Of a stretch of 64,000 nt of DNA, positions 22,503 through 53,233 are shown in pieces; the first letter of the stretch is position 1; the number at the start of each line of letters is the position of its first letter. The notes under the pieces were generated by a model. That model did not search any database, had not been told where the DNA came from, and was given only the letters and a program-made list of their open reading frames with translations. Location: positions 32,943,979 through 33,007,978 of the forward strand of contig NC_069001.1 in assembly GCF_001194135.2 (NCBI RefSeq), in the 5' to 3' direction. The translations under genes and the position numbers were made by a program. Source of the stretch: Octopus bimaculoides (lineage: Eukaryota).

Positions 22503-22685
22503 AAAATTATTAAAAATTAAAATTTAAATCCGATGAAAAGGAAGCGAAAAAAATAAAACAAACTAACAATAATGACGGTTAAAAAAAATAATGAAGCCTT
22601 TGGATTTTTACTGAACTTTTACTTCGTCTAATTAAAAAAAAAGACCAAGTTAGGATAAAAGAAAAAGTGGAATTTAACTGCAACA
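22503..22685 (+). promoter_or_regulatory. Probable 5' UTR portion of the first coding exon of the ERG-like gene, with a splice acceptor and three short upstream ORFs
   Basis: A long polypyrimidine tract ends in TTTATAG at 22502. uORFs at 22533-22556, 22572-22631 and 22591-22614. In-frame TAA at 22656-22658 lies upstream of the main ATG, whose context is CAACA-ATG. Confidence 0.55.
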
Positions 22686-22761
22686 ATGCCTGTCCGAAGA
22701 GGCAGAAGGACAGCCGGTAATAGGTTTCTGGATACTATAATAAACCGAGTTGAAGGATCCG
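22686..22761 (+). CDS. erg (KCNH2/6/7-like): First coding exon of an ERG-subfamily (EAG-family, KCNH) voltage-gated potassium channel: PAS-cap of the eag domain
   Basis: MPVRRGRRTAGNRFLDTIINRVEGS versus human KCNH2 [25 protein letters not shown] is 15/25 identical. The exon is 25 codons plus 1 nt (76 nt), then a canonical GTGAGT donor at 22762, as in KCNH2 (intron after c.76). The ORF-track continuation past 22761 is intron read-through. Confidence 0.85.
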
Positions 22762-23237
22762 GTGAGTACAAGGGGAATTTTGTTGTTCCAGTCATTGTGT
22801 TTTTGGTGACGGGAGAGAAAAGTATTGTTGTTTTCTCTTTTCTTTTTTTTTACAAGTGTATTTACTGTGTATCGAGTTTCAATACTCCTGCATACAAGTT
22901 AGTGTATGAGTATATATTTACATATAAGGACATATATGTATGAAATAAATATATGTATGCGCACATGAAGTAATTGTTAGGATGTGTGTTGCGCACATGA
23001 AGTAATTGTTAGATGTGTGTGTGTGTGTGTGTTTGACACTGTATAATTGTCTGATCAATATGTATGTTCGTGCAAGGAAAATCATGGGAGCATTATAGCA
23101 TGCGCTCTATCGGAACATATTTATTATAATTTGCGGCCCACCTGGGACTTATACACTGCACGATGATAATAATAAAAAGAAAATTATGATTGAGTTTAAA
23201 AATCATCATACACTTTATTAAGATACCTGACTGATAT

Positions 23238-23550
23238 TGGTTTCAAATTTTGGCACTAGGCCAGCAAGTTCGGGGGAGTGCTCGACTGGTACTTATTTTA
23301 TTGCCCTCGAAAGAATGAAAGGCAAAGTAAACCCTGGCGGAATTTGAATACACGATTCATGTTAGGACACGCATAAAGTGGCGAGCTGGCAGAATCATTT
23401 GCACGTCAGACAAAATGCTTAGCGGTATTTCGTCTTTCTTTGCGTTCTGAGTTCAATTCCACCGAGGTCATTTTGCCTTTCAGGGTCGATAAAATAAGTA
23501 TCAGTGGAGCACTGGTGTCGATGTAATCGACTTACTCCTTCCCTTGAAAT
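23238..23550. mobile_element. Inverted pair of family-A SINEs (23238-23349 minus; 23375-23550 plus)
   Basis: The minus copy carries the central and tail blocks; the plus copy starts AAAGTGGCGAGCTGGCAGAATC. Confidence 0.8.
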
Positions 23551-24364
23551 AATTAACTACATAAAGGTATCGAATCCTTCATATTACTTCCACCTAAATA
23601 CTTTAATGATATACATATATTATAATGCTTCAAATCTTCTGTAAATTTTCTTAGCACAAACTCAGAATGCAGTGCAAGTTGTTAATATCCGTGTAATGGA
23701 AAAACGCATCTTCCTTCTAAATTAAACGTGAAGTTTGGCACCCTTTAAGGAAGGGGAAGGAAAAATATAGGCCTCTATTTTGTTGTCATCTGTCACATTT
23801 TCTTGTTGAATTCATTTTTAGCATAACTCTCCTTCTTGTGGTGCGTTTAGAAGTTAAATTTCACGTCAAAAATACAAACGCGTTTTCTTCTGTTGAAATT
23901 AGCGTGTAATAAGTATGAATATCCTATAGACACGTGTACCTTTCATGAAACTCAAGCCGTATCACTGTGATACTGTGTGACAAAACCGGACCTTTGAATT
24001 ACAAATGAGAGAGAAAGAGAATTGATCTAGTATTGGTATTTTACTTGCTGACCCGAATGGATAAAAGTTTAAGTTGATCTCAATGGGAATTTGATCTCAG
24101 AAAGACAGAATCGTCACTGCAAAATATTCTCTCCCACGAGCTAAGTTACCCTACCAATTCGTTGCGACTATTTTCTCGGCTTGAACTTCTGGTCACCCCT
24201 CTATGAAGTCGGATCATGAAGGAGTCTAAGTTAATCCTTTTTTATTAATGAAGTTGGATAGAGTATAAGTAGACTGTGCATAAATTACCGATACTTCTGT
24301 TGACCGCACTCGATAACAACACCAATTTAGATAAATGCATACTAACTACGCGCACACACGCACA

Positions 24365-24395
<31 letters not shown>

Positions 24396-24889
24396 TGTGT
24401 GTGTGTGTAAAAGTGTATTGTATGTATAATACGTAATATAAAATTTATTATGCACCTGACTGTAGAATGAAAACTGGATCATGTGTAATTCGCATCCTGT
24501 ATCTTTATTGCACCCATCAGATATTTGCATTATTTGAAATCATGGCTTTTTGAATTCCCTTAATTCACATTCGTGAATTAACAACACTTTTAAAATTAGT
24601 AGTGAAACAGTTACATTTTTTAACTAAATTACAGAAACAGTCTGAGTGTCACTTATCTCTTCCAAAATACCTCTACAGTTATCTTATATAATTTAGTACA
24701 CAATGCCAGTAGTAATTTTTTTATGCTGCTTGATTCTATGGAAGTGCTACTTTATTTAACCCTTTAATCCATCATTTTAAAACCATTGCTAAACCAGTTA
24801 TTAAGAAAAAACTGTTGATGTTATTTTCTCTTGAAAGGATTAAAGACGTAAAGCTTAAATCAAAGAATTGATTTTTTTTTTTAATGTCG

Positions 24890-25720
24890 ACGTACCGGCT
24901 GAAGAGTTATTGGTGCGTTTTGTCACCATTGCTGTTTGATGTCCAAAGCAAATAAATTTTAGTGATTTAGTCCATCATTTCTAAAGAGACAGCATCTAAA
25001 TCCAATTTTATCTACAATTCGGCCATATGAAAAATAGTATTGGGCATATTACTGGTCGACGAATATTCTCTTGCGGAATTTCTGGCCAAGTTTCATGCAT
25101 TATGTCCCAGAGGTGTTCAATAGGGATGATATGTGGTGATTGGCTTGGTCATGGAAGCCTTTTAATGCCATTATTCTCATCCAACAGATCTTCGATCATT
25201 TTAGCCGTGTGACAAGGAGCCCCATCTTCCATAAATCTTTTCACATCAAATTCTTCATCACAGAGTCTCCAGACCCACACTCGACCACTGTCAGGAAATA
25301 CAGCAAATCTAGACTCATCAGAGAATATGACAGTGTCCCAAAATGCTAGTAGCCTCTTCACCATCTCACTGGCCCAATCTTTTCTCCGCTTGATGTTGAC
25401 TGGTCGAAAAAGTGGCTTCTTTCTTGCTGCTCTGCCATAGTCACAAAGTTTGTGGAGATACGTGACAGCTGTTCTGGGACTGACATCAACTTGTTCTGCT
25501 ATGTCAGAGGCCTTGCAACGAGGATTATCCTCCACACTTCTCTTAACAAAGAGAAGGGTCTGTCAGAGGGCCCTGGTTGATCTGGGTGAGGTGATGCTGA
25601 CTCCTTTCCTTCTATGGTAAATTGCACAATCACTCTATTAACTGTAGAAAGGTTTTCTGCGATTTTTCACTGACTATGTTCACCTTCACAATGACCCACA
25701 ATACAGCCTCTTAGAATTTC
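24890..25720 (-). mobile_element. Tc1-family transposon relic with internal deletions
   Basis: GRAARKKPL...VIFSDESRF (first D); MEDGAPCHTA (second D); WPSQSP..IPIEHLWD (E of the DD34E triad). The usual ...HGGG.VMVWG... segment between D1 and D2 is absent. Confidence 0.85.
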
Positions 25721-26162
25721 AGGCAGTTCCAAGGCTTCTTTTGTACAACGCATGATTAAACAGTTATATATAGAACCTGAACATAAAAATATCAATTAAT
25801 AAAAAATATAAACATTTAAGTGTGAGAATAAACTTAAAATGATGTTTTATGGGGTGTGTATTTACTTCTATCNNNNNNNNNNNNNNNNNNNNNNNNNNNN
25901 NNNNNNNNNNNNNNNNNNNNNNNNNNNNNNNNNNNNNNNNNNNNNNNNNNNNNNNNNNNNNNNNNNNNNNNNAAACGTAGACAAAATGATAAACAAGTAC
26001 AGAAAACACACAGGCCACATAGGGAACTTTCCTTCATCAGCTGCCACCATTCAACACTGGCGTTTACACACGCACACACACACACACATATATATATATA
26101 CATACACACACATTATATATATCTGTGCATATGTATTTATATATGTGCTTATATATGCACAG

Positions 26163-26203
<41 letters not shown>

Positions 26204-26619
26204 CACATACACATATATGTACTAGACGCACATTCATTTCTAGTTATACTCAAAACATTTGCATGAACATAAACAAACACTTTTACATTTTCTCATAAAT
26301 TCACAAATCTGCAATATATGCGTCTCGTGTAAGCATCGTCTACGTGTGTCTGATTGAATTTTCATTTTCTGTTTTTCTTTTTTCCAAACCAATCCTCTGC
26401 ACTGTGTCCTTTTGTATTTTCACTGTCCTCTCTATTTTAAGCAGTTTTCTTTCATCTTCCCAATTATCCTCTTCTCTAACTCACTCTGTTGATCCTGTTC
26501 ACCGGCTGATCAGTTTATTGTATTACATTTTATAAATAAACAGCAATGGAAGAGAGACAGGATAGAAAACAAAAACAATCTCTTTAAAATTAATCAATAA
26601 ATCATAAACACACTCACAT

Positions 26620-26623
26620 TATA

Positions 26624-26672
<49 letters not shown>

Positions 26673-26682
26673 TGTATGTATG

Positions 26683-26711
<29 letters not shown>
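26620..26711. repeat. (TA)n(TATG)n microsatellite
   Basis: Directly visible. Confidence 0.95.
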
Positions 26712-26713
<2 letters not shown>

Positions 26714-27736
26714 TTCGTAAGCTTATATTGTAAGTGTAGATGTATGAATGCCAGTGTTAGGTCTGATTGATTTTTATCCATATGTTTGTAAATAATGGAA
26801 CTATCTAGTTATTGTGTTCGTTGTTTCTTGTAAAAAGCAAAAAAAAACAAAGCTGTTAATCTTATGGACTGAAGGAAAAAACATGAACTCTACGACTTAC
26901 CCTTTACTCCTATAAACCTGGGATTTAATGGATTAATGAAAAAAAATAAGGCATTCTTTGTGTTTTAGTTTCACATCTGATTTCTGATTTCAATTCCTTC
27001 ACTTCCGTCATTAGTGAATCTTCGAATAGAAGTGATGTTCACCATTTTTTCCTTCCTTTCTTTGTTGCTCTTTTTTTAAAAAAAAACGTTTTTTATTGAG
27101 TAAAAAATTTCGATCGATATTATTCCAACACAGTTTCGATTCATTATTGTAGTAGCCAATTTCACTTGGCTGACTCACAAATGTCTTACAGGGCCTCCGA
27201 AAGAAAATAGGCGAGGAGGAATAAATCTGCTTTCATGTTCCGAGTCAAAATTCATGGGAGTGCGAGTTTAAAAAAAAATACTTTCATTATTTAGAAGGAG
27301 CTCTTAGATAGTTACGTGCCTCTCCTGTGTTTCCTTGGTCTTGAAATGATGTACCAGCCGAACCTATACTCCTTCAAGAAAAGAGACGTTGTATAACTTA
27401 TTTCTCATCATATATAAACTTGAGGTCTTACGATCCAAATCATCACAGAGTGTTATTTAACTAAGAAACTGGAGACACTCATTTTAGACTAATAGGATAT
27501 TGACCAGTATTTGTTTTATTGACCACAAAAGAATTCCTAAGTGGAATTTAAACTCAGAACTTAAAGGGATGCAACTAAGTATTCTCGGGTATGACTGTTC
27601 GGGCAATCTGCTATTCACCCACTGCAGAATAATCATAAGAAGAAACTATATTCATTATAACATTTCCACTTCTTTTCATATCAAAAACTTCCAAGGAACG
27701 ACTTTACAGTTTATTTCTCTAATATGGGTAGAATTT

Positions 27737-29045
27737 TGGTTTCAAATTTTGGTACAAGGCCAGCAGATTCAGGTGAGGGTGTATGTCGATTACATCGACT
27801 CCACTGGTACTTATTTTATCGATCCCGAAAGGTTGAAAGGCAAAGTTGACCTTGGCGGAACTTGAACTCAGAACTTAAAACGATTCTGCCTTCTCGCTGC
27901 TTTAATATCGATAAAATATTTGTGTTTATTGCACACAGGGGGCTAAACATAGAGGGGACAAACAAGAACAGACAAACGGATTAAGACAAAGTGGACCTCG
28001 GCAGAATTTGAACTCAGAACGTAACGGCAGCCGATATACTGCTAAGCATTTCGCCTAGCGTGCTAACGTTTTTGCCAGCTCGCCGCCTTTCGATAAAATA
28101 TCGATAAAATATTGTCTCTATGTTGATATACTTCAAAATACGTTTAAGTGGCGAATTTGTATTTCCCAAAGAATATACAGTCCATTCATTCTCTTTTACT
28201 ACTAGCAAGAGGTAAGGCGGCGAGCTGGCAGAAACGTTAGTACCAGTTACGCACTGGGGTCGATATAATCGACTTAATCCGTTTGTCTGTCCTTGTTTGT
28301 CTCCTCTATGTTTAGCCCCTTGTGGGGGCAATAAAGAAATAAGAACCGTTAGCATGCCGGGCAAAATGCTTAGCGGCATTTCGTCTGTCTTTGCGTTCTG
28401 AGTTCAAATTCCACCGAGGTCAACTTTGTCATTCATCCTTTCGGGGTCACCATTTGAACACTAGGGTCGATAAAATATCCACCATTTGAACACTGGGGTT
28501 GATGTAATCGTCTTACTCCCTTCCCCGAAATTGCTGGCCTTGTACCAGAATTAGAAATCATTATTAGCAAGAGCCCCAACGGAATTCATCTATGTCATAG
28601 GTCTAGTTATTCTTAAACTGTACATATTAGGCTAAATGAAGTGGTTTTGTGTGTTATATATGTTCGGATGTGTGTATTTGTCTGTTCGGTCGAGGTAAAT
28701 GCTGTGCGGAAAAGTCTGACAACGTGCAGCAGGGTAACAAATAGAAAGCACAAAAAGGATGAAAAATAATTTTAGATTTAATTAATTGCTGAAAGTAATT
28801 TTCTTTTGTGGGGTGGGATTGTGGAATAAATATTGGTTTCAAGTTTTGGCATCAGGCCAGCAATTTAGGGGGACAAGGTAAATCAATTACATCGATCCTA
28901 GTGCTCAACTGGTACTTATTTTATCGACACCGAAAGGATGAAGAGCAATGTCGACCTCGGCGGAATTTGAACTTAGAACGTAAAGACGGGCGAAATGCTG
29001 CCAAGCATTTTGCTTGGTGCGTTAACGATTCTGCCACTTTGTTGG
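27737..29045. mobile_element. Cluster of five family-A SINEs: 27737-27899 (-), 27921-28090 (-), 28214-28343 (+), 28345-28562 (+), 28832-29045 (-)
   Basis: Diagnostic head and centre blocks in each copy. The 27921-28090 copy is flanked by TCGATAAAATAT on both sides (TSD). Confidence 0.85.
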
Positions 29046-29149
29046 TGGAAAACATATTAAATAATATTGATTAAAGCGAGTCTTGTCAAAAGGTTTTTGT
29101 TGGCCGCAAAGTGCAAATGATTTCATTGCGCTAGTGCTGGAATTTTACA

Positions 29150-29485
29150 ACTCTGGAGATGTGAACATTATAATTCAGAACATCCTGAACTCAATATAGA
29201 CAGGATGTGCAGCATTAGTACCACGTAAGCACAAAAACATCTCAAAAGTGCAATTTGGGAGACTGCAGCAGTCAGACTTGCCAGGAAAGAACGTCGTAAT
29301 GCTGAACGGGAATACAAACTGCATAAATCAGATATAAACAGGAAAAAGCGCTATAAATCATTCAACCATCTCAAGCAGGTGACAAAAAAGGGCAGTGCTT
29401 GAATTTGAGCAGCGCATAGCAACCAACCCTGACAGTAAGGTGTTCTGGAAATATGTACGTTCAAGGCAGAAACCTCACTCTCCAG
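29150..29485 (+). mobile_element. CR1-like LINE ORF2 fragment (tether between endonuclease and RT)
   Basis: AVRLARKERRNAEREYK...AVLEFEQRIATNPDSKVFWKYVRSRQK resembles the ...YE..IA....NPK.FWKYV.SK motif. Confidence 0.55.
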
Positions 29486-30325
29486 TTATAATTTTTCTTT
29501 AAAAGAAAGCATTAGACTTTATTTACTTATGTATTTTAAAAAATGCAGACTTGACAGGTGTATGAATAAATGATGGATTGATCATTAAGATATTTTGCTT
29601 CTAATTTCTAGAATTACTAGGTTGGCTTCATTGCGAGTACCTGGACTTTGCTTCTGCGTTTGCTAGACATTGATATGCTATATTTACCACAATCCACCGA
29701 TTGCTCGATCAATGCATCTAAAAATTTGGTATTACAAAACTTTGTATTACAAGTTTGCAAGTATTATGTATGTATTACAAATTAATTCATGAAGCATCTC
29801 TTTAAGATACAGATTAAAACGTAACTATAATGCGCTTATAAAATTTTCCTGAGAAATTTTTCAAGTTCATTGATTTTATTTTTTCTGTATACTATTGACA
29901 CTGTGGAGAAATTATCCAAGTAGTCCTCATTCTGAATATTACTCATTCATTGTCAAGGCTCACCGATAAAATTCACATATAATTCCTCTTAAGTTGCTTC
30001 CTGTTAAAAATGCAAATTAGCTTACCATGGTCGTGGATGGGACTGTTTCCTATTGTAAAGCCATAGCTAACGTATTTTGCTTGTTTGTAATCTTAAGGGG
30101 AACACTTAGCAGTGATTCGGATTATGTTCCCCGAACGTATTGCGAAATATTTTCCTTAGTTTTACTTATCAATTNNNNNNNNNNNNNNNNNNNNNNNNNN
30201 NNNNNNNNNNNNNNNNNNNNNNNNNNNNNNNNNNNNNNNNNNNNNNNNNNNNNNNNNNNNNNNNNNNNNNNNNNNNNNTTTCTCATTTCCTATGAGGTAT
30301 GGTTTTCCTAATCCGAAACTCCATC

Positions 30326-30498
30326 CATGCCCGACGCTAGGTGGGGTGGCAGCGGACGGCACTGCCCTCTCACTATTCAATGGTTGCACCCTCAGATTTA
30401 GAAAATACAGTTGACAAAAATCTTCCCACAATGCAAATTAGTGCCTACCCAGAATATTCTGAAGCATCCCCGGGCACCGAAGTCAGGCAACGGGCCTG
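30326..30498 (-). mobile_element. hAT-type MITE, copy 3
   Basis: TIRs CATGCCCGACGC / GCAACGGGCCTG; perfect 8-bp TSD ACTCCATC at 30318-30325 and 30499-30506. Confidence 0.9.
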
Positions 30499-32099
30499 AC
30501 TCCATCATAAAGTCGTATTGTTTGTAACAAACTGTACTGAATGTGCTTTTGTTACTCTTCTCAAACTCTCACTCTCTCAACAATTCATTTAAAAATATAT
30601 TTGCTGATTCAAGTAATTATTCGAGAGTAGCACTGGATGTTATTTCCAAACGAGTTCTAGTCTCTTCAAATTATTATTTTGGAATTGCATCATGGTTACA
30701 TCAAATTCAAACTTCCTTGCTATTATGTCCAGTTGTAATAACTACAAATTAACAAAGGCTTTTTATTCCCCTTCCTCATTGAGTCGTTTTCCTTTATATA
30801 CTGACGGTATAATTATTTTATTAATCTCTAGCCCCAGTGATGGAGAGGCAAGTCGACCTCAATGATCGACTTCAACGTCCCTGTCGGGCTTGCCGCGAGT
30901 ATCAGAATATCATGAGCTTAAAGCTAGATCCTCAGGCTAATAATAATAATAATAATGATAATAATAATAATAATAAACGAGCTTAGCAAGCAAACACCGG
31001 CTTAGCCAGCTGTTGGTGTTATTTCTGGTCATTTAGTAGATTTTCTTTTTATTGATCTCGAAATCGATTTCAGAGGTAGCGACTATATCAAACTAATATG
31101 TATCCGTTGAAGGTATATATTTAACAGCAGCAGCAGAGTGAAGAATATGCCCGACAGCGATTCATCGCCCTTTTGGCAGTTTAAAGAAGTAAAGGTTAAG
31201 TGTTAAAGTGGCTTCCAATTTTATGGCATCCTAGTTCTTGAGTCAACGTTTAATGTTGGGTGTACAACACAAATTCACCAGCAGCACTTTAACGAGCAGC
31301 CTAGTAGATAGGTCAGTATAATTAGTTGCAATGAAAACAAGTACAATCCTATTAAACACGCCTGATATGTCATTACATTTAGATGTTACTGTTGTTTTTA
31401 TCTTTCATTGAGATGCTGTGACATCTCCAAATGGATCTCTTATTTAGTGCATATGAAATTTTCTTACATACCCACAAAATAACTTATTTGTTGGTGATGG
31501 TAAGTGGATTGTTGATTAGATCGATGACTAGTAATTGTTTTATTGCACTTGGAAGGATAAAAAGCAAAAGATGACAGGATTTTAGTTCATACAATAATGG
31601 AATAAATCACAATGTTATAGAAAACAATACAATTGACAAAACAGTATAATATGCAAGCAGAGTTTTATTAAAGATAAGTATTACATACTAAAAAAAAAAA
31701 AAATGCTTATATGGCACATAGTTGTTAACAGTATTAAATTCTGTTAAAACTAGTCTTTTGAGATATAGACAATAAAAATGTATCTTTACACGTAAAGTAT
31801 TTAATCAAGAAACATGAACACACACACACANNNNNNNNNNNNNNNNNNNNNNNNNNNNNNNNNNNNNNNNNNNNNNNNNNNNNNNNNNNNNNNNNNNNNN
31901 NNNNNNNNNNNNNNNNNNNNNNNNNNNNNNNNNNNNNNNNNNNNNNNNNNNNNNNNNNNNNNNNNNNNNNNNNNNNNNNNNNNNNNNNNNNNNNNNNNNN
32001 NNNNNNNNNNNNNNNNNNNNNNNNNNNNNNNNNNNNNNNNNNNNNNNNNNNNNNNNNNNNNNNNNNNNNNNNNNNNNNNNNNNNNNNNNNNNNNNNNNN

Positions 32100-32336
32100 A
32101 TCCATATGGCCCTTCGGGGGTCCATATAAGATTTCGTTGTTAAAATCTGTTTGCAATAAATTGGTTTTACTTCTACAAAACAAAATATTTTGACATTTTT
32201 TTAAATGCTAATATTTATTTTTAACTATACTTAATTATAAAAAATATATGATTTTAAACACTGAATGGCTAGGAGGGTACATCCGATCAAAAGGGGCCCA
32301 TAGGTAAAAAAAAAAAAAATGGCTGAGAAACTCTGG
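32100..32336. mobile_element. Right end of a Charlie-like hAT MITE (left end lost in gap)
   Basis: Ends GGCTGAGAAACTCTG, resembling the GGTTGAGAACCACTG-type TIR. Confidence 0.4.
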
Positions 32337-33669
32337 CTTAGCTAATTAATATATCGCAAATGTGGGTGATAAATAAATCAACCTGGAACAAAGGACGAAG
32401 TTCTGTCTGTCTGTCTGTCTCTCTCTCTCTCACACATACACTGTCTTCAGAATATAGCGAGAAATGCTTTCAGGTGTTCTGTGTCGTCGAGCCATATAGT
32501 AGACAGATGTACATGAAGCAAAGCAACACAACTTTAGTCAAGCTAATCGAGGTGTCTTGCGAGCTGAGAGTTTACTAATACTGAACATGCCAGTCAGTTA
32601 GCAGCACAATTCTCATGACTATCTTCATGTGTCTTTGAAAGCGTGAAATGAAAGTTGGAAATGTATTCACTTAGTCATGAGAGAAGTCCTGTTTGAAATC
32701 ATTTTATTTTACTTACGTTGCTGATGTTTCCTTGATTCAGTCGAATATGAAATCTAGGCAAAAGTAAATATGTATCTGTGTGTGTGTGAATACAAAACAG
32801 GAAAAATGCTAATTGGCTTGTTGGTTCATTATTAAATATTTAATTTTCGTCGAATATTTCTTAGCCAAAACCCGTCCTTCTCTCAGTTATATTCTAGTAA
32901 TTTTTGTAAGTCATTACTGAAAAAAATAGCGATACTTTCATCAAGTACGCAATGCTTCATCTGCTTCTTATCCCTTCTTGAAAACTTGCCTCAGACAGAT
33001 GATCTGGAGTGTGGAGAGCTAATTTATCTTGGTAGAAGCACGTCTCAATATTACTGACGAAATAAGAACCATCCACGTTCATCTCGAATACCAAAAGACT
33101 AACAATTTGTTCTGCTACAAGACACACTTTATGAAAAGAGCATTTTGAAATATTTCCAGTTTAAATTTTGATGAAAAATGTGGAAATTTGGGGAAATGTT
33201 AAGTTTGGTGTTTGAGAGAGAGAGAGAGAGATTTGGAAATCAAGCTGCTAATCTGTATGTAAGCATATTTATTGTTTGAATCATGCGAAAAGATTAAGCA
33301 ATTTATGTGGAGTCAGTTAAACTCTCGTAATAATACGAAAAATAGAATTCAATAAAATTTTAAATGTTTATTTTTTTTTTATTTGTTGAAGTTTACAGCT
33401 ATCCGAGTCAATGAGCTGTCAGGCGGCTGGTCGAACGGTTCATGGTCTGTACATGATCACTGGCGGTCGCAACCTTGAAATGTTCCATTCATTTCCTGTC
33501 CTGTCCTGTTCGTCCATCCATAGTTTAATGACAATGATATCACTCATCAGTTCTAAGACATCCAGTGTTTCTAGGAGTGGCTGACAAGTCTAATACAGAC
33601 ACAAAACATTGGACGGATGTGGTCGGAACTCCACGCCAGCGCGCTGACAGCTTTGGACTTCCATGACTC

Positions 33670-33809
33670 CATAAGCGTAGCTAGGGGGTCGGGCGGGCGG
33701 TAGGGGCGGTATTTTTCACCCTGTTGTAGGCAATATGTTTTTTTGTGGGGTCAGGGGGCGGCAAACGAAAGGACCACCCCGGGTGGCACACACTCTAGCT
33801 ACACTAGTG
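33670..33809. mobile_element. hAT-type MITE, second family (140 bp)
   Basis: TIRs CATAAGCGTAGCTAG / CTAGCTACACTAGTG; TSD CATGACTC / CATGGCTC (7/8). Confidence 0.8.
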
Positions 33810-33889
33810 CATGGCTCCCACTTTTACTCATATGTTATATCTTTCCTGGTGAGGTTGTACTTGGTAGATCTCTCAATAGCAAGGTTGTC

Positions 33890-34075
33890 TTATATCTTTG
33901 AATTGATACTGAAGAACAAGTTCCCAGACACCGAGAACCTCGATTTCATGCTATTGCCCAGCATGTGCACACACTCTGCTATACAGGGCTAGACTGTAAC
34001 TGGCCTGATTGCATTGACAGAATGGACGAAGAACGCCCTCTGAAACATTATTTTTGCAGTGAGTTGGCTGGGTTG
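33890..34075 (+). mobile_element. RTE-clade LINE 3' ORF fragment
   Basis: WPDCIDRMDEERPLKHYFCSEL matches the RTE motif W.GH..RM...R.PK...YSEL. Confidence 0.55.
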
Positions 34076-36809
34076 ATATGATCGATTAATGGATAGTTCA
34101 GATGCTATAAAGATACTTGCAATGTTTCCTCATCTACTTAACTGTAATAACGTTGACAGGAAAAAAAAACTGACCACCGCAAACAGAAGTAACGTTTAAT
34201 AGACACATGTTTCGCTAGCTTGCACTATCGAGTTCAAATCCTTGTAAAAGTATTGCCTGATTTCCTCTTTAAAAACAATCTCCCTGCCTATATTACACGA
34301 CTTGAGTAGGTATTCAATAAAGCTTGAATACTACAGGCTAAGGAACTGACACACAGTGTGTGGAGACTTTTTCAGAGAAGTTGATTTAATCGATCCAATA
34401 ACATTGCTTTTATTTACTTTATCAGTCCGAGAAAAATAAAAAGTGAAGTTGATCGTTGTGGGACTTGAACTCAGAATTTAGAGGGACCGTTAATCAATTA
34501 CTTTGTCTAATTACTACTTCTGCCATCCACATCTGATTCCAAAAATTAATAAAGGATAGTTTTGCATAGACTGTTCGTTTGTTTTTAGACGGTTAAGTTG
34601 GCTACTTTTTTTCACCAAAGTTATTCATAAACTATGAAATTTTACAACAGCGAACGCTTCTATCCTATGGTGCTTATATGCAACAAGCTTGTTAAGTGTT
34701 TGATTAGTTTGCCTGCTACGAACATAACACAATTCTTCTGAGGACCGTCGACCAACTGGAGAGTTAGTTGATAGACAACGACATATCTTGATAGTCACAA
34801 GCTGCCTTTTCCGCACTGACGAAGCTAATTATAAAAAAAAGCTGGTCGTTGTTTCGTTTGTTTTGCTAGAGCAGATCAAAGCGCTCAAGCCACGATCTTA
34901 CTGCATTTTTTTATTGACCAACACTGTATTACTCAGTGTGTCTTTTCTTTTTTATGACGATAGGGTAAGGTATGATTTGAAAATGTATTCTTTCTAGCAG
35001 GTGGAATAACCATGCAGAAGTATCCTTGTTGGATGAAAAATACTATCTTTAAAGATTAATTAATTGATATTATTACTTAAGCTTGCACTATGGAACACTC
35101 CCTTGAACAGCTGTCGAGTGGTGACTTCAACGATTTCGGCAGAATCACTGACAGTTTTACTCCCTCCAGCGGGTTCTAGTAGTATTGGTACTATCAGAAA
35201 ATTTCGGGGTTCTTTCTACTCACACAGTAGAACACCTCCATCCCGTTTTCAATGCAGCCACCATACCAAAACGAGTTGCAACTGTAAGCATGCCAACCTT
35301 GCAACTGAAAAATTTTTTTCTCCCTACCCTTTGATCTGCAATGCCTGTGATGAAGTATTTCCTGCACCCCCCCNNNNNNNNNNCCCCCCACTAAACAAAT
35401 CACTGCTCTGTTAGCTTTGTTTAGTCCAATGCTAGCCAAGTGGATGTAGTTATAATCCCACGATTATTCTTCCTCACTACAGGCATCTTATAATTGCCAT
35501 CTTCTGAACTGAATCACAAATAATTTAATGTTTTACCATCAGTCACTTCTTTAACGAAATACATAATAAAACTAAGTAAAAGGGTATGGATATAAAAGAA
35601 TAGAAAAAGCAGTGTAGATAAGCGTAAAGGAAAATCAATTGAATTATCAAGTTAGAAATAGGTAAAAATGTAATAGAGTAAAACACTAATCTAGAGTTAC
35701 TTCCCTTCCATCCTGTATATTTTATTTCCAATTTTTCTCAAAATAACTATTTGCTTACATTTTGATACAGCGACTACCCATTTCTGATAGGATTTAAGTT
35801 GAGATTACTCTCGGCCCGACATATTTAAAGCCTTTTCTCAATGTTACTTTGGCGGAACTTTCAGAATAGCTATCATGAAATTTCGTTTTATTATATTTTT
35901 TTCGGTATTTAAAAAAAATCATTTTGTAATATCCCTCTTGCCAAAACACTAGGAATTCGCATTTAAAAAGATCCCCCCCCCCAATCCATAGTTTTAAAAT
36001 TTCTTTAAACCCTTCCTCTTCATCGCGCCTTCAGAATAGCAGCCACGATTAAAATTTTATTTTAATCCTGACAGCTAATTTTCTTTTTTTCACCTCTAAA
36101 TTACAGTATGTTATATTTGATGGCAAACTTGAACGGCTCGGGGCAACCCATTAAGATGTTTCGACTCACGAACGAGAAAATAAATACTTTATTATGAAAA
36201 CACGCTGTTATTTTCTACCGGATATTATACTGGTTAATCCCTCTGCTTGCAATTCGTGTTTTTTCTTCGAAATAACCGACACGCGTCTATGCCTAAATTT
36301 ATCATAAGCACAAGGTCTATGTGCACAGTAAAATTGATGCTTGTATATATACACGTACAGATGAGTGGCGAACAAACACGCATTCATCGTTTTGTTACTA
36401 TTACATAGGTGGCATTATTCGACTTTACGATCAGTCTGTCTGTCTGTCTCTCTCTCTCTCTCACTCACACACACACGTTGTAGCCATATACTGGAAAATA
36501 CTTTATGGCTATAAACTGGTAAAACACGCAGATACGTATAATTGTAGCACTAGTTAGGTAGACTGAGTCACTAATGAACTACCTTGCTTTACATCACAGC
36601 GCAGCTTCCACGAGAGTAAACATACGTATGACATACATATGTATATAAACCGCTTATTTCATTATAATTACGAATAATGTTTCAACCGCTTATTATCTGC
36701 TGATTATATTGTTACCGAAAGAGCTTTGTCCAAAAGCGACCACAATAAGCGGCTTTCACTGTATGCGCACTACATACATGATGAGAAACTTGAAACTGTT
36801 GGATCTAAG

Positions 36810-37090
36810 TTTGAAAATGTATTGTTTCTAGCAGGTGGAATAACCATGTAGAAGTATCCTCGTTGGATGAAAAATACTATCGATAAAGATTAATTGATTG
36901 ATATTATTACTTAAGCTTATCATTGGTGCACTAGGCTGTATAACAACAGATTTGCTTAAAAGCCCACAAATGCTGGAGTTCGCCAAAGAAAGACAAAGTA
37001 AACGTATTCTCATTGTCCAAACACAATGGATTAGTGGTACTGTGAAAATTTGCAAAACATTCCAAAGAATCTTCATCCGAGGTTCCTGAG
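36810..37090 (+). mobile_element. C-terminus of an RLE-type (R4/Dong-like) LINE; its first 109 bp are duplicated at 34976-35084
   Basis: IIGALG motif followed by ...WISGTVKICKTFQ; the two 109-bp copies differ at 6 positions. Confidence 0.6.
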
Positions 37091-39654
37091 CTAAACACAT
37101 GCACACAATCACATATACATATTAAATCCGTACACATACAAGCAGTAACGAAGCAAGCAGACACACTTATATACTCAAGTAACATGTATATCCACTATGT
37201 GAGTTCAAGCATGCATGCATACATACATACATACACCAATTCAAATACCCACAAACCAGAAGAAGTGTCTTGACTTAAACAAAAGATCTTCGTCACTTTG
37301 TTAGTGACCGGTTTGAATTCTTGAAAGGAAAAATAACTTAAAATGCCTAATACATACATCAAAGAATGTCTGCAACTTGCCTAAACTTCCTCTCTGCACA
37401 CTCTTATATAGCGAACATTGACCGTATCAACCTCATCAGTTTGGAAGGATCTGCAAAGGTGACCCTCCTCTGATTGCTTTAACAAAATTTGTCAGCGAGG
37501 AAATCTCTGAATGGTTGTTCGATTTCATAGAAATATTAACCAAATCTCCAAATTATTACATTACCATTTTAAGAAAAGAAGGATAATGTAAGTTTAGCCA
37601 TACTATTTAAAAAGATGGAGTGGTTGTAGCTGGAATGTCTTTGATTTCAGGTATGCTTGATTAAGCCTGACCTTGGACTAAACAAAGACATAAAAGAATG
37701 CTGTAGCAAAAGTGAACTGCGAACTTTAATCATTCCAAATCTGAAACGTTTATTGAAGTAAAACTATATTTATGTCATTTATTAATTTTATATCAAAAAT
37801 AGTCTCTTGGTCAAATGTATGTGTATTTGTGGGCATATGATATATCCACCCGCATATTGTTTGAAATAATACAATACTCTAGGTATTCCGATTTTCTAGA
37901 TCAGTTATATTGGAAAATATATACCGAGATATATTTCTTAACATCATTGTATCCTAATCTCCGACAAAGTACAATAAAAATGCGCGATGTGATACTAATT
38001 CACTATATCGTATGTCGCCCAAAAGCTACTGTCTAGCAGAGATCAACACTTTGCCATCTTATCACAACAAATCCATTTATATCTATGAGAAAATCTGAAA
38101 CATCTTCTTTTACTGCATATTTGGCACCGAGGAAATGTCGTACATGAAAATGATGTCGCTACTGCTGTTATTGTTGATATTATTAATGTTGTTTGATATT
38201 TTTTTTATTGTTGTTACTGCTCTTTGTACTCGTTGTTGTAGTAGTTGTAGCCGCCATGATTAATTTTTGTACATGAATAAATCGAAAAAAAAAAAAAAAA
38301 TCACACCAATTTTCCTACTAATTCTTGTCGGTGTTCAGTACCAACAAGTCACATTCCCGTGGGAGGATTTAAGTTAAGTACTGCGAGTCGATGATACACT
38401 CATCAGTTATGCAATGTCTTGATTAGTACTTTAATGTAGCATCTATTATAAGGCAGAAAGAGAAGAAAAAAAAGGATGAAAAGTGGATTTTAAAATGGTT
38501 TGGTCCATCTGTGACTGCTGTGACACTGTTGGTCGTAAGCAACAAATGTATCTGCTGTCGTTATTGACGTCTTGTGGCTACACTTGTCTTTACACCAATT
38601 CTTCTGTTGCTACTATTGTCATTCTGTTGTTGAAAATTGCCATTTTTATTTTAAATTGCTGCTTGTATTTATTTGTTATTGCCAAATATCATGCCGACGA
38701 AAGGATTAATTTCAATAAGAACTTCTTTCACAGCATGAGGCCACACTAAAATAGAACAACTCTGAGTAGTTTGAGGGTTTTGGATATCGCTATGTGGCTT
38801 TTGGATGTGACATCTTATCTACAGCCTCATGTGGAACACTGCCATGAGAAAACAAGAAATAAAACAATAACGATTTCTTTAGACTAGACTAGGCACAAGG
38901 CCAATTTTGTAATGGAGGTGGTATAGTCGATCAACTAAGTCTAGGTCTCTTACCTGTACAAATTGTTTCGGCAGTCGACTGTCACCAAGCTTCTCTGCAT
39001 GTTTTGAACATATTAAGGCATGGGCTCGAGCAGGTATTAGGATATATCAAGTGTGCACACGTACCAACTAATTTCAGGAAGTAAATGTTAAACTTAATTG
39101 ATAGTGAACTTAAAGTCAATTCCAGCATGATTTGATTCCTGAAACGTGATGGATCAAAATACTTGCACTGCATCTAATCTAATGCTACCACTTACGCCAT
39201 CAGCAATTAAAGTGAAACGTATCAAATGCTTCCACCATTTTACAGGTGTTCCTTTTATTTTGCTCACTGTTGGGATAAAAAAAAAGTAGTTTATTTTACC
39301 TGAGTTCTAAACTTGAGTAAATACTGTAAAATAAGTACGTGCTCTCGAATTATAAAAGAGTCACATTTATCACGAAAACATACAACACTGCATTTTAACT
39401 ACCCACGAATATCATTTAAAAACTCAACACGCTTTACAAATACACGCACTTATAATATATGATGATCCTTAATGGCAACGACAAATATACTTTATGTAAC
39501 CAAGACAGCATAACAAAAGCTGTATCTCTTTTTAATTGAAAATAATTCTGCACTGCTACCACTAAACAAGATTAAATACGCCCCACACCTAAGAGTATTC
39601 CCCAACTACTGAATCACAAATGTGTAGTGTATTTGCTCTGTCCCTTCTGCTGCG

Positions 39655-39766
39655 GGTTCTCGAGCAAGTGTCTTCTGCTATAGTCTCGGGCTGATCAAAG
39701 CCTTGTGAGTGGATTTGGTAGACGAAAACTGAAAGAAACCTGTGGTCTATGCATATATATACTATA

Positions 39767-39799
<33 letters not shown>

Positions 39800-39960
39800 C
39801 TTTATGCCTGTGTTTGTCCCCAACCACCGCTTGACAACCAGTGTTAGTGTGTTTACATCTCCGTAACTTTGCAGTTCGGCAGAAGGAACCGATGGAATAA
39901 ATTCTTCAAGGTGGTGCCACAGCATGACCGCAGTCTCATGACCGAAACAGATAAAAGATA
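39655..39960 (+). mobile_element. Family-B (CORE-like, internal microsatellite) SINE
   Basis: GCAAGTGTCTTCTGCTATAG...GCCTTGTGAGTGGATTTGGTAGACG, an internal (TG)n and the tail GACCGAAACAGATAAAAGA. Confidence 0.85.
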
Positions 39961-41814
39961 TACTACTCACACTCAAACCCGCCGTTCTGTGTATGCGACT
40001 CTCTTTCCTTCGCTTTCTGTGGTCCACTCCGGATCTTGTATCAGTAATTCCACCCAATCTTTTCTGTTGCATGCATTTTGAATTCCCTATCTGTCTAAAT
40101 CGTGTCTCTAAACCCCAACCTGCAAATATTCAAACTGATGCTCAGCTGTATGAAACCCCGGCAAGCTACCTCTCTCCCATAGACTGAGAAGACCTGGAAG
40201 GAATTTATCTATATTTTCTAGCAGTAAATAATAAAAATGGAATTATATAATTCTCATATATTTTACTAGGGTGCTAGTGACTTCAATTGAAATAAAATGG
40301 TTTCAACCAATGAATTAGAAACGAAATCACCTTATCATGACTGTATCTCTTTCCTATGACACTATTGTTTTACGTAAGGTTATTATCATTTTATTTTATG
40401 AAAATACGGAACAGCGAATAAAATAATTTTGAATTTTGTGAATTTGAGATGTTATATTTGTGGTCTGCCTTAGCCATTAGCAACGCAAGTGAAGTAAAAT
40501 GGTTGTGACTGGAAGTCGAACCTGGGATGTTGATCCTAATTTACACTTGGGTATATTTATATTTTTCTGCAATGGATCCTGTGCATAAGAAAGAAATTAT
40601 TTGTTAAAATACTATAAAAATAGAATATTTCGAATACTTCTTTGTTCGTTTGATTTCGTTAAGTTTGGGAGAATTATTCTTGAGAAAACTTATTATGTAC
40701 CCCCTCAACTATTTTTGGTTAGATCCCTCTTCAAAAACAGTTTAACTCGTTTAAGTCTTGACATTTCTCTATCCGAGCTGTAAACATGTGAAAAGTATTT
40801 TTTTGTAATTGTGAAACAGTATATCTCTGGGGCTTGTTCTGTCTTTGATTTGGGAAATTATCCTTCGAGATATCCAGAAAAGTGATATGTAAGTGATATG
40901 CTTTGAGGTGTTACACTTGTCGTAACATATAGCAATCCAGTTTGTAGATTGCTTTTATCCTAAAACATGGAGTTTGTTTTCATTTGTAAAACGTACTTTG
41001 GGCTACCCTTCTGCTAAAAAAAAAAAAAAAAAAATACCAAACTTCTGTTTATGCTGTTAAAGAAGAAAAATTATTTTCGGCATTTCAACTCTAGTCTCCC
41101 AATTGTAAAAAAAATTCGTTGGTTTGGAATAGTAAAAAAAAAAAAAAGCAAACAAAATATTAGACATATTTGTGAAAGACAATATACCATGTAGGATATA
41201 ATGAGTTTATAACAGATTAGCTGCTTCAGCAGTTTTTTTTTTCAAGTCCTTTATTTGAGGGACTTTCACCTGGGCTATTTTTAGCAAGATGATATTTTTT
41301 GAATTTTATTTCATCAGAAGAATGAGTGCCCCTTTTCTCGTACATACCTCGTTTCCTCCATCCCCTTGGTTATGTGGGTGTGAATTGCATCGCATAACCA
41401 CGTGGTTGCAGGTTCGACGATGAATGGCAGAATCAGTTGAGTGGCGACAAAACACTGAGTAGTAAGTTATAGTTAAATTATTTTACGATCAGAATTCAAG
41501 TCTCGCAGAAATCGACTTTGAGGTCGATAGAATAAGTGCTAGCTAACTCTTGCGGTCGATTTAATCCACTGTTTTTTCACCTACAATTTGTGGCATTGTC
41601 TCAGTTAGAAATTTATGTAGATAAATACGAACATCTGTTCATCTCGCTTTTTGTGTCGAAATTTTTAGGTCTAATATCGTGTGGTTAAATATCATGTTTG
41701 GAGATCTTATAGTAAAAAAAGGTCAGTTCCTTTGCACGAAAGATATTCTTCTTTCTGTTAATAGTCATAGCATGGGAGGTGAATTTTTTAATAAAAATAC
41801 TTTTACTTTTACTT

Positions 41815-41960
41815 TTCTGAGTTGAAATTCTGCCGAGGTCGACTTTGCCTTTCTTCCTTTCGGAATCAATAAAATAAGTACTAGGTGAGTACTGGGGTCG
41901 ATGTAATCGACTTACCCCTTCCCTTGAAATTGCTGGCCTTGTGCCAAAATTTGAAGCCAT
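41815..41960 (+). mobile_element. Family-A SINE, 3' two-thirds
   Basis: TTCTGAGTTGAAATTCTGCCGAGGTCGACTTTGCC...GCTGGCCTTGTGCCAAAATTTGAA. Confidence 0.85.
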
Positions 41961-42563
41961 TATCATTTGTAGGAGTTAAAATTTCAAACTATTGAATATG
42001 TTTAACTCAACCGAGTAGCAACATTTCCTTAAACTGCGTGTGTTCTAATATTTTAGCCATCACCTAGTTGTATTTGTATGAAGTCATCAACCGCAGATGT
42101 TCCTCCAGTTCCAAACTTATCAAATTCGGTTCTCTCAATTCGTTTCTCTCAATTCGTTTCTCTCAATCATTTATAATATCGACGTATTGGTTTTTATGGC
42201 ATCAGTTCCAGAGCTCTAAAACGCTTTTAACACTTTTGTATAAAAAAAAACATTGGTACTACAACCTTAAAAATATCATTGTCTTGGATAATAGGTCATG
42301 GCATCTTATACGTTTTGCTAAGGATAACGATGTTATAAGCGAAAGCATTCCAAATGGTAATTAAGTCGTACACTCAAACTACTGAAAATACATATAGGGA
42401 CAGATTTTACATACATCTTTTAGAACATTGTCATTTTATAAGATTTTGCTGGCAAATTTTTAAATTAACATAAACAGTTATTTACATGAAAGAAAATTAC
42501 TGGAGGACTTTCATCTAATTCTTCCAAATCTTTGTTAAAGCTGCACTAAAACTATTTGTGAGG

Positions 42564-43385
42564 AATTTTTTTTTATCCCAGCAACTGGTCACGCACCACA
42601 AGGTTTAACGGAACCTACTGAAGCAAGCCATGACGTTCGCAGCATTACCACGGGCGATGGCGGTGCTAAGGCGTTAGGAAAGCCAAGTACCCTTACGAGT
42701 ATCACCTGACACCTCTGTGAGGCTAGCTGCCAACGTTGACAGGAACTTCGTGGTTAGTAGCCAAATCCCTCCGAACGTCTCAAACGCCACAGATTGGAAG
42801 AGATAGTTCACTGTCAGGTCTCGATACTTCAGGGTTTTCTTCCGTTCGGCTACAGAAGCAGTGACCCTCCCATTATCTGCAGCAACCAGGATGTGGGTGG
42901 GAGCAGAGGAGTCGCAGACTCTGGCTTCCCAAATGAGGCACCTACCTCTAACATAAGAACAGAAGGTAAGACCATCTAGTCTCTTTCCATCACTCCTGGA
43001 TAACCCCGACGGCTGCAGAACTGAGGGGATATTAATCCGAGCCAGGGCCCTCTTAATAATTAGGTTTAGCTCGGTGGGACGAGCGAAGCGACCATCATTT
43101 AGGCGGCAAAACAAACCATGAAGACCTGTAGGGTCGAGAGGCCTACCACAGCGGCATCTCAGTCCCTACAGACGTCAGTTCCCACTCTAAGTGCGATGGA
43201 GATGCGGAGTTCATCTAGACTCTGTAGACCTCCAGTGTTGGCCACAGGCAGGGCATCATTCCAGTCCCCTGAGAATTTTGCACTAGCTGAAAGTTGGCGA
43301 CACCTTGGAAATTGGGACCTGGACGCAGATCGTCCCATACTCTCTGTATCTTCTCCGATCTATGAGTGTGTATTTTACGAATGAT
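42564..43385 (-). mobile_element. 3' 0.8 kb of a CRE-clade non-LTR retrotransposon (zinc finger plus RLE nuclease)
   Basis: SGDWNDALP...LRISIALRVG...CRCGRPLDPTGLHGLFC (CCHC); LNLIIKRAL...GLSRSDGKRLDGLT (PD-D/ExK region); FETFGG; WLS*RLSTAIARGNA. A short poly(A) lies at 42564-42573. Confidence 0.9.
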
Positions 43386-45033: not shown

Positions 45034-45300
45034 AGCCGGATTAAGACCCATCGAGGCCCTAAACACTTAAAAGATTTTGATGCCCCCACAAAAGATTATG
45101 GAATTCAAAATATAAACAATAACAAACCATGAAATAAATTTTTGTTTTTCAAAACGAAACAAAACTAATAGTAAGATGGAAAATAATGTTTATTTTTGTA
45201 TACTTCCACTTTATTTATATTTGAAAAGTTTCCTCCTACTTTTTTGAATTGCAGTCTTTGATCAGACCCTCAAAATTAATCTTAGGTAACCCATCTGCAT
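45034..45300 (+). mobile_element. Left part of a hAT/Tip100-like MITE
   Basis: Starts CAGAGCCGGATTAAGAC; no matching right TIR found. Confidence 0.35.
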
Positions 45301-45639
45301 CTATACTTAGTAGAGGTAAAGGCATCCCGGTTATTATTTTAGCAAGTTTAAAGTAATTTCTTTTGTGCCGTAGACATACAAACACTAACACACTAGTATT
45401 TAGAATCCATCAAACGCATTCTAAATATATATAATAGATTATATTATAATAATTATATAAACAGAACTATCCATACAAACGTATAACATAATATATACAG
45501 TCATTATGGTACAACTCGTAAATGTAGATAAAATAAAACATAGCATTGTAAAGACATAGATAAGGTCATGAAGTTTCTTAATCTAGTAAAAGATATGTTG
45601 CTTATAATGTTGGAAGAAAAAATGGTTAAGAGAGTGTTG

Positions 45640-48683: not shown

Positions 48684-48716
<33 letters not shown>

Positions 48717-53182: not shown

Positions 53183-53233
<51 letters not shown>

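What the first reader, a model, noticed from the sequence alone, without database searches (positions are those of the whole stretch)
22686..22761. ERG-type K+ channel exon with an unusually divergent PAS-cap (RRTAGNR in place of HVAPQNT)
Seen: MPVRRG and FLDTII...EG are retained, as are exon length and phase, but residues 7-13 read RRTAGNR. Established: the (H/L)(V/L)APQNTFL stretch is strongly conserved across EAG, ERG and ELK channels. The N-terminal tail (R4, R5, G6) and the following amphipathic helix control slow deactivation in hERG, and fly and nematode ERG channels lack the eag domain. Inference: this is an eag-domain-bearing molluscan ERG paralogue with three extra Arg residues in the cap, so its gating may be altered.
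Basis: partly seen in the sequence, partly recalled or inferred. Interest (0 to 1): 0.75.

Follow-up and report, generated by a model that had tools for sequence, protein, structure and literature searches.

The report
Octopus Elk potassium channel first exon
This 76-base stretch is the real, already annotated first coding exon of the octopus Elk-type (KCNH8-like) potassium channel, not an ERG channel, and its unusually arginine-rich tip is shared by other octopuses, cuttlefish and squid-like cephalopods.

Summary
Window 22686-22761 (+) is an ATG-initiated 76-nt coding exon, MPVRRGRRTAGNRFLDTIINRVEGS plus one base, followed by a GTGAGT donor.

The ERG interpretation is wrong. The peptide is identical to the first 26 residues of RefSeq XP_052831361.1, [quoted passage not shown], and of O. 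sinensis XP_036367959.1.

That protein is the Elk (Kv12) orthologue:
- Its best matches are Elk channels, ahead of Eag and Erg.
- Its best solved structure is the Drosophila Elk PAS domain.
- Published trees place it with Aplysia and Crassostrea Elk (posterior 1.0, bootstrap 100).
- A canonical-cap octopus Erg exists separately.

The divergent cap is not decay. RNA-seq contigs from cuttlefish and another decapodiform-like cephalopod carry MPKVHQKGRK(N/D)(I/V)GNKFLD.IINRVDGS joined to the PAS domain, with many synonymous codon differences. All 8 cephalopod Elk caps have 5 Lys/Arg in the pre-helix tip. The 221 other KCNH caps examined have 3 or fewer.

I infer that the polybasic tip tunes eag-domain- and PIP2-dependent open-state stabilisation. 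This is untested.

The gene and exon are already known. The cap variant, and an alternative equal-length cap exon elsewhere in the gene, appear undescribed. Interest is modest.

The parts
22659..22685 (+). Presumed 5' UTR immediately upstream of the start codon. It is bounded by an in-frame TAA at 22656-22658 and has A at -3 (aacaATGc).
   Evidence: The transcription start was not determined, and upstream ATGs at 22533, 22572 and 22591 all terminate quickly.
22686..22761 (+). Coding part of first exon '1A' of the octopus Elk (Kv12 / KCNH8-like) channel gene. It encodes the PAS-cap MPVRRGRRTAGNRFLDTIINRVEGS plus the first base (G) of codon 26.
   Evidence: Identical to residues 1-26 of XP_052831361.1 (O. 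bimaculoides) and XP_036367959.1 (O. sinensis). Homologous cap in decapodiform transcripts L001-L007.
22762..22767 (+). Consensus 5' splice donor GTGAGT, phase 1.
   Evidence: The annotated protein continues G-NFVLGNA, not the read-through GEYKGNFVV.
22762..64000 (+). First part (at least 41.2 kb) of intron 1, rich in microsatellites, assembly gaps and transposon relics. It holds no further exon of the gene.
   Evidence: tblastn of the full protein and of the alternative N-termini finds nothing else in the window. The gene spans about 135 kb in GCA_001194135.2 and about 196 kb in GCA_006345805.1.

Best explanation
Window 22686-22761 is the first coding exon (here called 1A) of the Octopus Elk / Kv12 (KCNH8-like) voltage-gated K+ channel gene. 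It is most probably from O. bimaculoides. It encodes the PAS-cap: an unstructured N-terminal tip (residues 1-12) followed by a short amphipathic helix (about 13-21/23). It is spliced in phase 1 to a distant exon, more than 41 kb downstream, that begins the PAS domain.

Shown:
- The exon is identical to annotated octopus proteins.
- The protein belongs to the Elk subfamily.
- The cap positions invariant across Elk channels are kept (N12, F14, L15, D16, I18, R21, G24).
- The tip carries 5 basic residues, against 1-2 in other Elk caps.
- This polybasic pattern is conserved, with many synonymous codon differences, in decapodiform cephalopod transcripts.

Inferred from work on human and zebrafish Elk and on hERG: the tip reaches towards the S4-S5 linker and C-linker of the tetramer. 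There the extra positive charge would strengthen or retune the eag-domain-dependent, PIP2-enhanced open-state stabilisation (mode shift, or voltage-dependent potentiation, with slowed deactivation). In human Elk1 that stabilisation depends partly on the single cap residue K5.
For: Sequence and start/donor context.

Identity to XP_052831361.1 (found in Data S2 of bioRxiv 10.1101/2025.09.21.677649). The cluster of 14 RefSeq/UniProt octopus entries is named KCNH8 or KCNH8-like.

Elk assignment:
- blastp gives Aplysia Elk 745 bits, Apis 674, Anopheles 666 and human Elk 612, against Eag 481-494 and Erg 362-456.
- Published trees place it sister to Aplysia + Crassostrea Elk (posterior 1.0, bootstrap 100), on a long branch.
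- PDB best hit is 4HP4, the Drosophila Elk PAS domain, at 4.9e-40, against the hERG eag domain at about 9e-32.
- The top 120 homologues are all named KCNH8, KCNH4 or KCNH3, or are unnamed.

Conservation:
- Decapodiform RNA-seq contigs carry a homologous cap joined to PAS, channel core and CNBHD. P0388 is on 14 contigs and clusters with a Sepia pharaonis protein; P0255 comes from SRR27666079.
- 17 of 25 aligned residues are identical, and 11 of those use different synonymous codons.
- Invariant cap columns are retained in a 41-sequence Elk alignment.
- K+R in the tip is 5 in all 8 cephalopod Elk sequences and 3 or fewer in 221 other KCNH caps.

Structure: the AF2 model shows residues 1-12 as coil with pLDDT below 50, a helix at 13-21, and a PAS fold at 27-130 with pLDDT 70-89.

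Function of caps:
- Elk1 open-state stabilisation requires the eag domain, and PIP2-dependent stabilisation is enhanced by cap residue K5 (PMC4621751).
- The cap points towards S4, the S4-S5 linker and the C-linker, and regulates potentiation in Elk (PMC7515569).
Against: - I saw no octopus transcript directly. The octopus evidence consists of predicted RefSeq models in two species. An O. vulgaris annotation gives only the alternative exon 1B and an eag-less start, not 1A.
- The tip (residues 3-11) is the least conserved part of the cap in other molluscan Elk channels. Some of the divergence may therefore be tolerated drift rather than adaptation.
- The whole octopus protein sits on a long branch.
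- No electrophysiology exists for any cephalopod Elk channel that I could find.
- The AF2 model is of low overall confidence (mean pLDDT 53) and monomeric, so it says nothing about tip contacts.
Confidence: 0.9

Rival explanations
1. One reading: the exon belongs to an eag-domain-bearing molluscan ERG (Kv11) paralogue with a divergent cap.
For: MPVRRG and FLDTII are identical to hERG, and tblastn scores hERG above my human Elk query for the 25-residue exon (E=0.002 against 0.12). Erg is duplicated in molluscs (bioRxiv 10.1101/2025.09.21.677649).
Against: The annotated protein that begins with this exact peptide is Elk by similarity, signature motifs, PDB match, published phylogeny and NCBI name. 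Both octopus Erg genes are accounted for elsewhere. One has the canonical cap (CAI9741795.1) and one lacks an eag domain (XP_052826676.1).
Confidence: 0.02
2. The exon is a prediction artefact or decaying pseudo-exon. On this view octopus transcripts really start at exon 1B or at the eag-less exons, and 1A was added to the gene models by homology only.
For: The 2015 model (XP_014785975.1) and the O. vulgaris annotation lack 1A. I could retrieve no octopus transcript containing it.
Against: - The frame is intact, with an ATG, a Kozak-like A at -3 and a consensus GTGAGT donor in the conserved phase.
- The peptide is identical in O. sinensis.
- Orthologous cap exons are expressed and spliced to PAS in decapodiform RNA-seq assemblies.
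- Amino acids are conserved despite near-saturated synonymous change.
- All Elk-invariant cap residues are retained.
Confidence: 0.05
3. The exon is real, but the divergent tip has no functional consequence. On this view it reflects relaxed constraint on residues 3-13 in lophotrochozoan Elk channels, on a generally fast-evolving cephalopod gene.
For: The tip varies in Aplysia, Biomphalaria, Pomacea, Bradybaena and oysters. The octopus branch is long (0.39 against 0.21-0.25). In hERG the tip is disordered.
Against: Five basic residues and the G-R-[RK]-x-x-G-N-[RK] pattern are kept between octopods and decapodiforms, whose full-length proteins are only 57% identical. The conserved basic residue before Gly (K5 equivalent) is also kept. 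Single basic cap residues have measurable gating effects in Elk1 and hERG (PMC4621751).
Confidence: 0.3

Closest known systems
Elk / Kv12 channels (human KCNH8, KCNH3, KCNH4; Drosophila Elk; Aplysia XP_005095054.1)
   Same: - Orthologous by similarity and published phylogeny.
- Same architecture: cap, PAS, S1-S6 with GFGN pore, C-linker/CNBHD.
- Same cap-exon length and phase.
- Retains the Elk-invariant cap residues N12, F14, L15, D16, I18, R21, G24 and a basic residue before G6.
   Different: - Residues 7-13 read RRTAGNR instead of LLAPQNT, giving 5 rather than 1-2 basic residues in the tip.
- The helix reads IINRVEG instead of IATRFDG.
- One residue is missing between cap and PAS (GS-G-NF against GTHSNF).
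- Long branch in the trees.
- These differences are shared with decapodiform cephalopods.
hERG (Kv11.1, KCNH2) PAS-cap, NMR structures 2L0W/2L1M/2L4R
   Same: MPVRRG, FLDTII and EG are identical. The tip is disordered and is followed by an amphipathic helix. The hydrophobic helix positions 14, 15, 18, 19 and 22 are conserved.
   Different: The rest of the octopus protein is not Erg. In hERG the cap controls slow deactivation. In Elk it acts on voltage-dependent potentiation and PIP2-dependent mode shift (PMC7515569, PMC4621751).
hERG1a / hERG1b alternative N-termini
   Same: The octopus gene also has predicted isoforms that lack the whole eag domain: X5 MYQFKKR... (also in O. vulgaris and Argonauta) and X6 MDCILSF.... 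This is analogous to hERG1b.
   Different: Octopus additionally has a second cap exon (1B, MKNTKEMSLLKDLEKVLKTMGKKYPG) of the same 26-residue length, joined to the same PAS exon. This would be a cap swap rather than a domain loss. All of these are predicted isoforms, not verified here.

Membership tests
KCNH (EAG-superfamily) channel, eag domain with PAS-cap | An N-terminal cap with M-P-x-basic-basic-G, then N-x-F-L-D-x-I...R..G, immediately preceding a PAS fold. | tested here: met
   (invariant N12, F14, L15, D16, I18, R21, G24). The PAS domain is recognised (PF13426/PF00989). PDB eag-domain hits run from 1e-24 to 5e-40.
KCNH (EAG-superfamily) channel, eag domain with PAS-cap | The cap exon is joined to a protein with a voltage-gated K+ channel core and a C-linker/CNBHD. 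| tested here: met
   XP_052831361.1 and P0252 carry PF00520, PF07885 and PF00027. In decapodiforms the join is seen on assembled RNA-seq contigs. In octopus it is seen only in predicted models.
ERG / Kv11 (KCNH2, KCNH6, KCNH7) | Groups with Erg channels by similarity and phylogeny. | tested here: not met
   Erg references score 362-456 bits against 612-745 for Elk. The published trees place it in the Elk clade.
ERG / Kv11 (KCNH2, KCNH6, KCNH7) | Erg-type signatures: RKF(I/V/L)IANA after the cap, GFGNVSPNTNSEKIF in the pore, QRLYSGTARYH after S6. | tested here: not met
   The octopus protein reads NFVLGNA, GFGNVSANTNAEKIF and QRAYARRATFH. Octopus Erg CAI9741795.1 has the Erg signatures.
ELK / Kv12 (KCNH3, KCNH4, KCNH8) | Groups with Elk channels by similarity and phylogeny. 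| tested here: met
   (4HP4, the Drosophila Elk PAS domain, is the best solved relative).
ELK / Kv12 (KCNH3, KCNH4, KCNH8) | Canonical Elk cap MPx(R/M)[23 protein letters not shown]. | tested here: inconclusive
   Seven invariant positions and the K5-equivalent basic residue are kept. Near-invariant Q11, T13, A19, F22 and H26 are changed or lost in cephalopods.
ELK / Kv12 (KCNH3, KCNH4, KCNH8) | Hyperpolarised activation range and voltage-dependent potentiation (mode shift) that needs the eag domain and is enhanced by PIP2. | not testable with these tools
   This requires heterologous expression and patch clamp. The properties are known only for vertebrate Elk (PMC4621751, PMC5440166).

The most novel reading that the evidence does not exclude
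Coleoid cephalopods have remodelled the gating cap of their single Elk channel into a conserved polybasic tip (5 Lys/Arg, the highest of 229 KCNH caps examined). On this reading, choice of first exon, acting through cap charge, sets the strength of PIP2- and voltage-dependent open-state stabilisation in different neurons. That would be a natural cap-swap experiment not described for any KCNH channel.
Probability: 0.3. Interest if true: 0.5.

Novelty: already known. Interest (0 to 1): 0.27.

Why it matters
As a genome feature it is ordinary: an annotated first exon of an annotated ion-channel gene, already used as an Elk sequence in a 2025 phylogeny. The value of this check is twofold. It corrects the subfamily from ERG to Elk. 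It also shows that the odd cap is a conserved coleoid trait rather than a pseudo-exon.

If the polybasic tip and the alternative cap exon do alter gating, cephalopod Elk would offer a natural test of how basic cap residues and PIP2 set mode shift in KCNH channels. So far that question has been addressed only by point mutants such as Elk1 K5Q and hERG R4/R5.

Tried and rejected
- Searching with the 85-aa read-through ORF found nothing, and no contig carries that ORF. This says little, because the word-indexed search only collects targets of similar length.
- Following the ERG lead cost two large searches. A chimera of exon 1 with the hERG PAS domain returned only short Erg fragments with canonical caps. 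A full HMMER scan with a Dreissena Erg N-terminus returned no RRTAGNR-like cap.
- The identification came from the sequence supplement of bioRxiv 10.1101/2025.09.21.677649.
- Exact look-ups of XP_052831361.1 and XP_036367959.1 gave no locus. Look-ups of the sister isoforms gave gene ranges but no DNA, because the ranges exceed 100 kb. I therefore could not place exons 1B and 2 relative to 1A, or confirm the species by DNA identity.
- The AF2 model of the full protein is of low overall confidence. I used it only for the eag domain and did not run a fold search.
- Pfam scans of the larger window ORFs gave only sub-threshold transposase HTH hits.
- I considered a frameshift or assembly error as the cause of RRTAGNR. 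I rejected it because the frame is continuous and the pattern recurs in independent species.

Full report
**What is in the sequence**

Window 22686-22761 on the + strand is a 76-nt open frame. It starts with ATG and translates to MPVRRGRRTAGNRFLDTIINRVEGS, with one extra G. A consensus donor GTGAGT follows at 22762. An in-frame TAA lies 30 nt upstream and position -3 is A. The opposite strand has a stop.

The window is 34.5% G+C. It has seven N-gaps of irregular size, microsatellites and degenerate mariner/Tc1-like ORFs. This is what one expects of a scaffolded octopus assembly.

**Finding the gene**

The protein tools were of limited use while I followed the ERG lead:
- The 25-aa peptide was too short.
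- The read-through ORF found nothing.
- A chimera with the hERG PAS domain, and a full scan with a Dreissena Erg N-terminus, returned only canonical caps ([12 protein letters not shown]...) from vertebrates, bivalves, spiders and insects.

These results did confirm how conserved the Erg cap is.

The sequence supplement (Data S2) of bioRxiv 10.1101/2025.09.21.677649 contains XP_052831361.1 from Octopus bimaculoides. It begins MPVRRGRRTAGNRFLDTIINRVEGSGNFVLGNAKSDGLPVVYCSEGFFEITGF.... The first 26 residues equal the window exon. Residue 26 (G) uses the exon's last base.

A tblastn search of that 1052-aa protein against the window matches only exon 1 (E=2.6e-11). Exon 2 therefore lies beyond 64000, more than 41 kb away. 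This fits gene ranges of about 135 kb in O. bimaculoides (GCA_001194135.2) and about 196 kb in O. sinensis (GCA_006345805.1).

**Which subfamily**

The protein is Elk (Kv12), not Erg.
- blastp gives 745 bits to Aplysia Elk, 674 to Apis Elk, 666 to Anopheles Elk and 612 to human Elk. Eag references score 481-494 bits and Erg references 362-456. The eag domain alone ranks the same way.
- The best solved-structure relative is 4HP4, the Drosophila Elk PAS domain (4.9e-40). The hERG eag domain scores about 9e-32 and EAG1 about 1e-25.
- In the preprint's Bayesian and likelihood trees the protein is sister to Aplysia XP_005095054.1 plus Crassostrea XP_022320592.1, inside the lophotrochozoan Elk clade. 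Support is posterior 1.0 and bootstrap 100, on a long branch.
- A database search with the full protein returns only KCNH8-, KCNH4- or KCNH3-named or unnamed proteins.
- Its 90% cluster holds 14 RefSeq/UniProt entries named KCNH8 or KCNH8-like from O. bimaculoides, O. sinensis and O. vulgaris.

Octopus has its own Erg genes. One has the canonical cap (CAI9741795.1, [24 protein letters not shown]...) and one lacks the eag domain (XP_052826676.1). The same preprint notes Erg duplication in molluscs and loss of the eag domain in some Erg channels.

**Is the divergent cap real and constrained**

O. sinensis XP_036367959.1 has the identical cap.

Two more distant cephalopod lineages are represented by RNA-seq assemblies.
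- P0388/P0391 (998 aa) sit on 14 contigs from the SRR292714xx runs and share a 90% cluster with a Sepia pharaonis protein.
- P0255/P0385 (1032 aa) come from SRR27666079. I could not determine the organism.
- The two are 71% identical to each other and 57% to octopus.

Their transcripts start MPKVHQKGRK(N/D)(I/V)GNKFLD(T/N)IINRVDGSNIFVL(G/A)NA... and continue through PAS, channel core and CNBHD.

Codon by codon against the window exon, 17 of 25 aligned residues are identical to the cuttlefish sequence. Eleven of those 17 use different synonymous codons. That is the signature of purifying selection on the peptide.

In a 41-sequence Elk alignment the octopus cap keeps every invariant cap column (N12, F14, L15, D16, I18, R21, G24). 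It differs at columns that are near-invariant elsewhere (Q11, T13, A19, F22, H26).

Counting Lys+Arg in the segment before the FLD helix gives 5 in all eight cephalopod Elk sequences.

The tip is, however, the least conserved part of the cap in other molluscan Elk channels.

**Structure**

An AlphaFold2 model of the O. sinensis protein with that alignment is poor overall (mean pLDDT 53). Within the eag domain it gives coil with pLDDT below 50 for residues 1-12, a helix at 13-21, and a PAS fold at 27-130 with pLDDT 70-89. The hydrophobic helix positions 14, 15, 18, 19 and 22 match hERG and Elk. The canonical layout of disordered tip plus amphipathic helix is therefore retained.

**How it most likely works**

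Established for relatives:
- The PAS-cap points its N-terminus towards S4, the S4-S5 linker and the C-linker. [quoted passage not shown]
- In human Elk1, open-state stabilisation requires the eag domain, and PIP2-dependent stabilisation is enhanced by cap residue K5, a universally conserved basic position (PMC4621751).

Octopus keeps the K5-equivalent (R5) and adds R7, R8 and R13. My inference is that the polybasic tip strengthens or retunes this PIP2- and voltage-dependent stabilisation. Nothing here tests that, and neutral drift of the tip remains a serious alternative.

**Other features of the gene (outside the window)**

The predicted isoforms show a second first coding exon of identical length, MK(N/K)(T/A)KEMSLLKDLEKVLKTMGKKYPG, joined to the same NFVLGNA exon. 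It occurs in O. bimaculoides, O. sinensis and O. vulgaris. There are also two eag-less starts, one of them shared with Argonauta. None of these exons is in the window.

**Verdict**

It is wrong on the subfamily. The exon and gene are already annotated under the correct family name. What seems undescribed is the coleoid-wide polybasic cap and the alternative cap exon, which deserve a modest follow-up.

Noticed in passing
Not in the window; proteins P0376, P0378, P0374 (XP_014785975.2, XP_036367958.1, CAI9738247.1): The same octopus Elk gene has an alternative first coding exon (1B) encoding MK(N/K)(T/A)KEMSLLKDLEKVLKTMGKKYPG. It has the same 26-residue length as exon 1A, an amphipathic pattern and K5, but no similarity to any KCNH cap. 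It is joined to the same PAS exon. This would be a mutually exclusive cap swap.
   Followed up: partly
Not in the window; proteins P0383, P0380, P0253, P0254, P0375, P0377: There are predicted eag-domain-less isoforms analogous to hERG1b. One start, MYQFKKR(S/A)VVDPT(Q/E)NVIGMMDEILQEAVSGQQ, is conserved in O. bimaculoides, O. sinensis, O. vulgaris and (diverged) Argonauta hians. A second start is MDCILSFP....
   Followed up: partly
window 22762-22791 (+): The intron opens gtgagtacaagg and then GGGAATTTTGTTGTT. In the exon's frame this reads G-N-F-V-V, mimicking the true exon-2 start G-N-F-V-L, and it is followed by ttccag. Sampling the window gives about 2e-4 for GNFV within 15 in-frame codons. 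This is post hoc and unexplained.
   Followed up: partly
window 19616-20472 (+), 4735-4983 (+), 25149-25535 (-): Degenerate mariner-like and Tc1/Tc3-like transposase ORF relics (for example ...YSPDIASSDYHNFRAMAHF...). Pfam hits are only sub-threshold: HTH_Tnp_Tc3_2 at 6.5e-6 and HTH_32 at 0.0018.
   Followed up: partly
window 60275-60871 (+): A 198-aa ORF with a reverse-transcriptase-like motif (LRYVDDTFILWPH). It had no Pfam hit at E up to 0.01 and is probably a retroelement relic inside intron 1.
   Followed up: partly
window 4300-4721, 20674-21144, 25873-25972, 30175-30278, 31831-32099, 35374-35383, 58684-59176: Seven N-runs of irregular length, mostly flanked by (CA)n or (TA)n repeats. These are estimated scaffold gaps, which favours the gap-rich O. 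bimaculoides assembly as the source. The species was not proven by DNA comparison.
   Followed up: no
Proteins P0273, P0267, P0275, P0269 (Aplysia, Biomphalaria, Bradybaena, Pomacea Elk): Gastropod Elk channels have lost the otherwise near-universal basic-basic-Gly and LLAP of the cap tip (for example MPKNPSSSSQNTF, MPRNTSSQNTF). The Elk cap tip is therefore unusually labile across molluscs, not only in cephalopods.
   Followed up: partly
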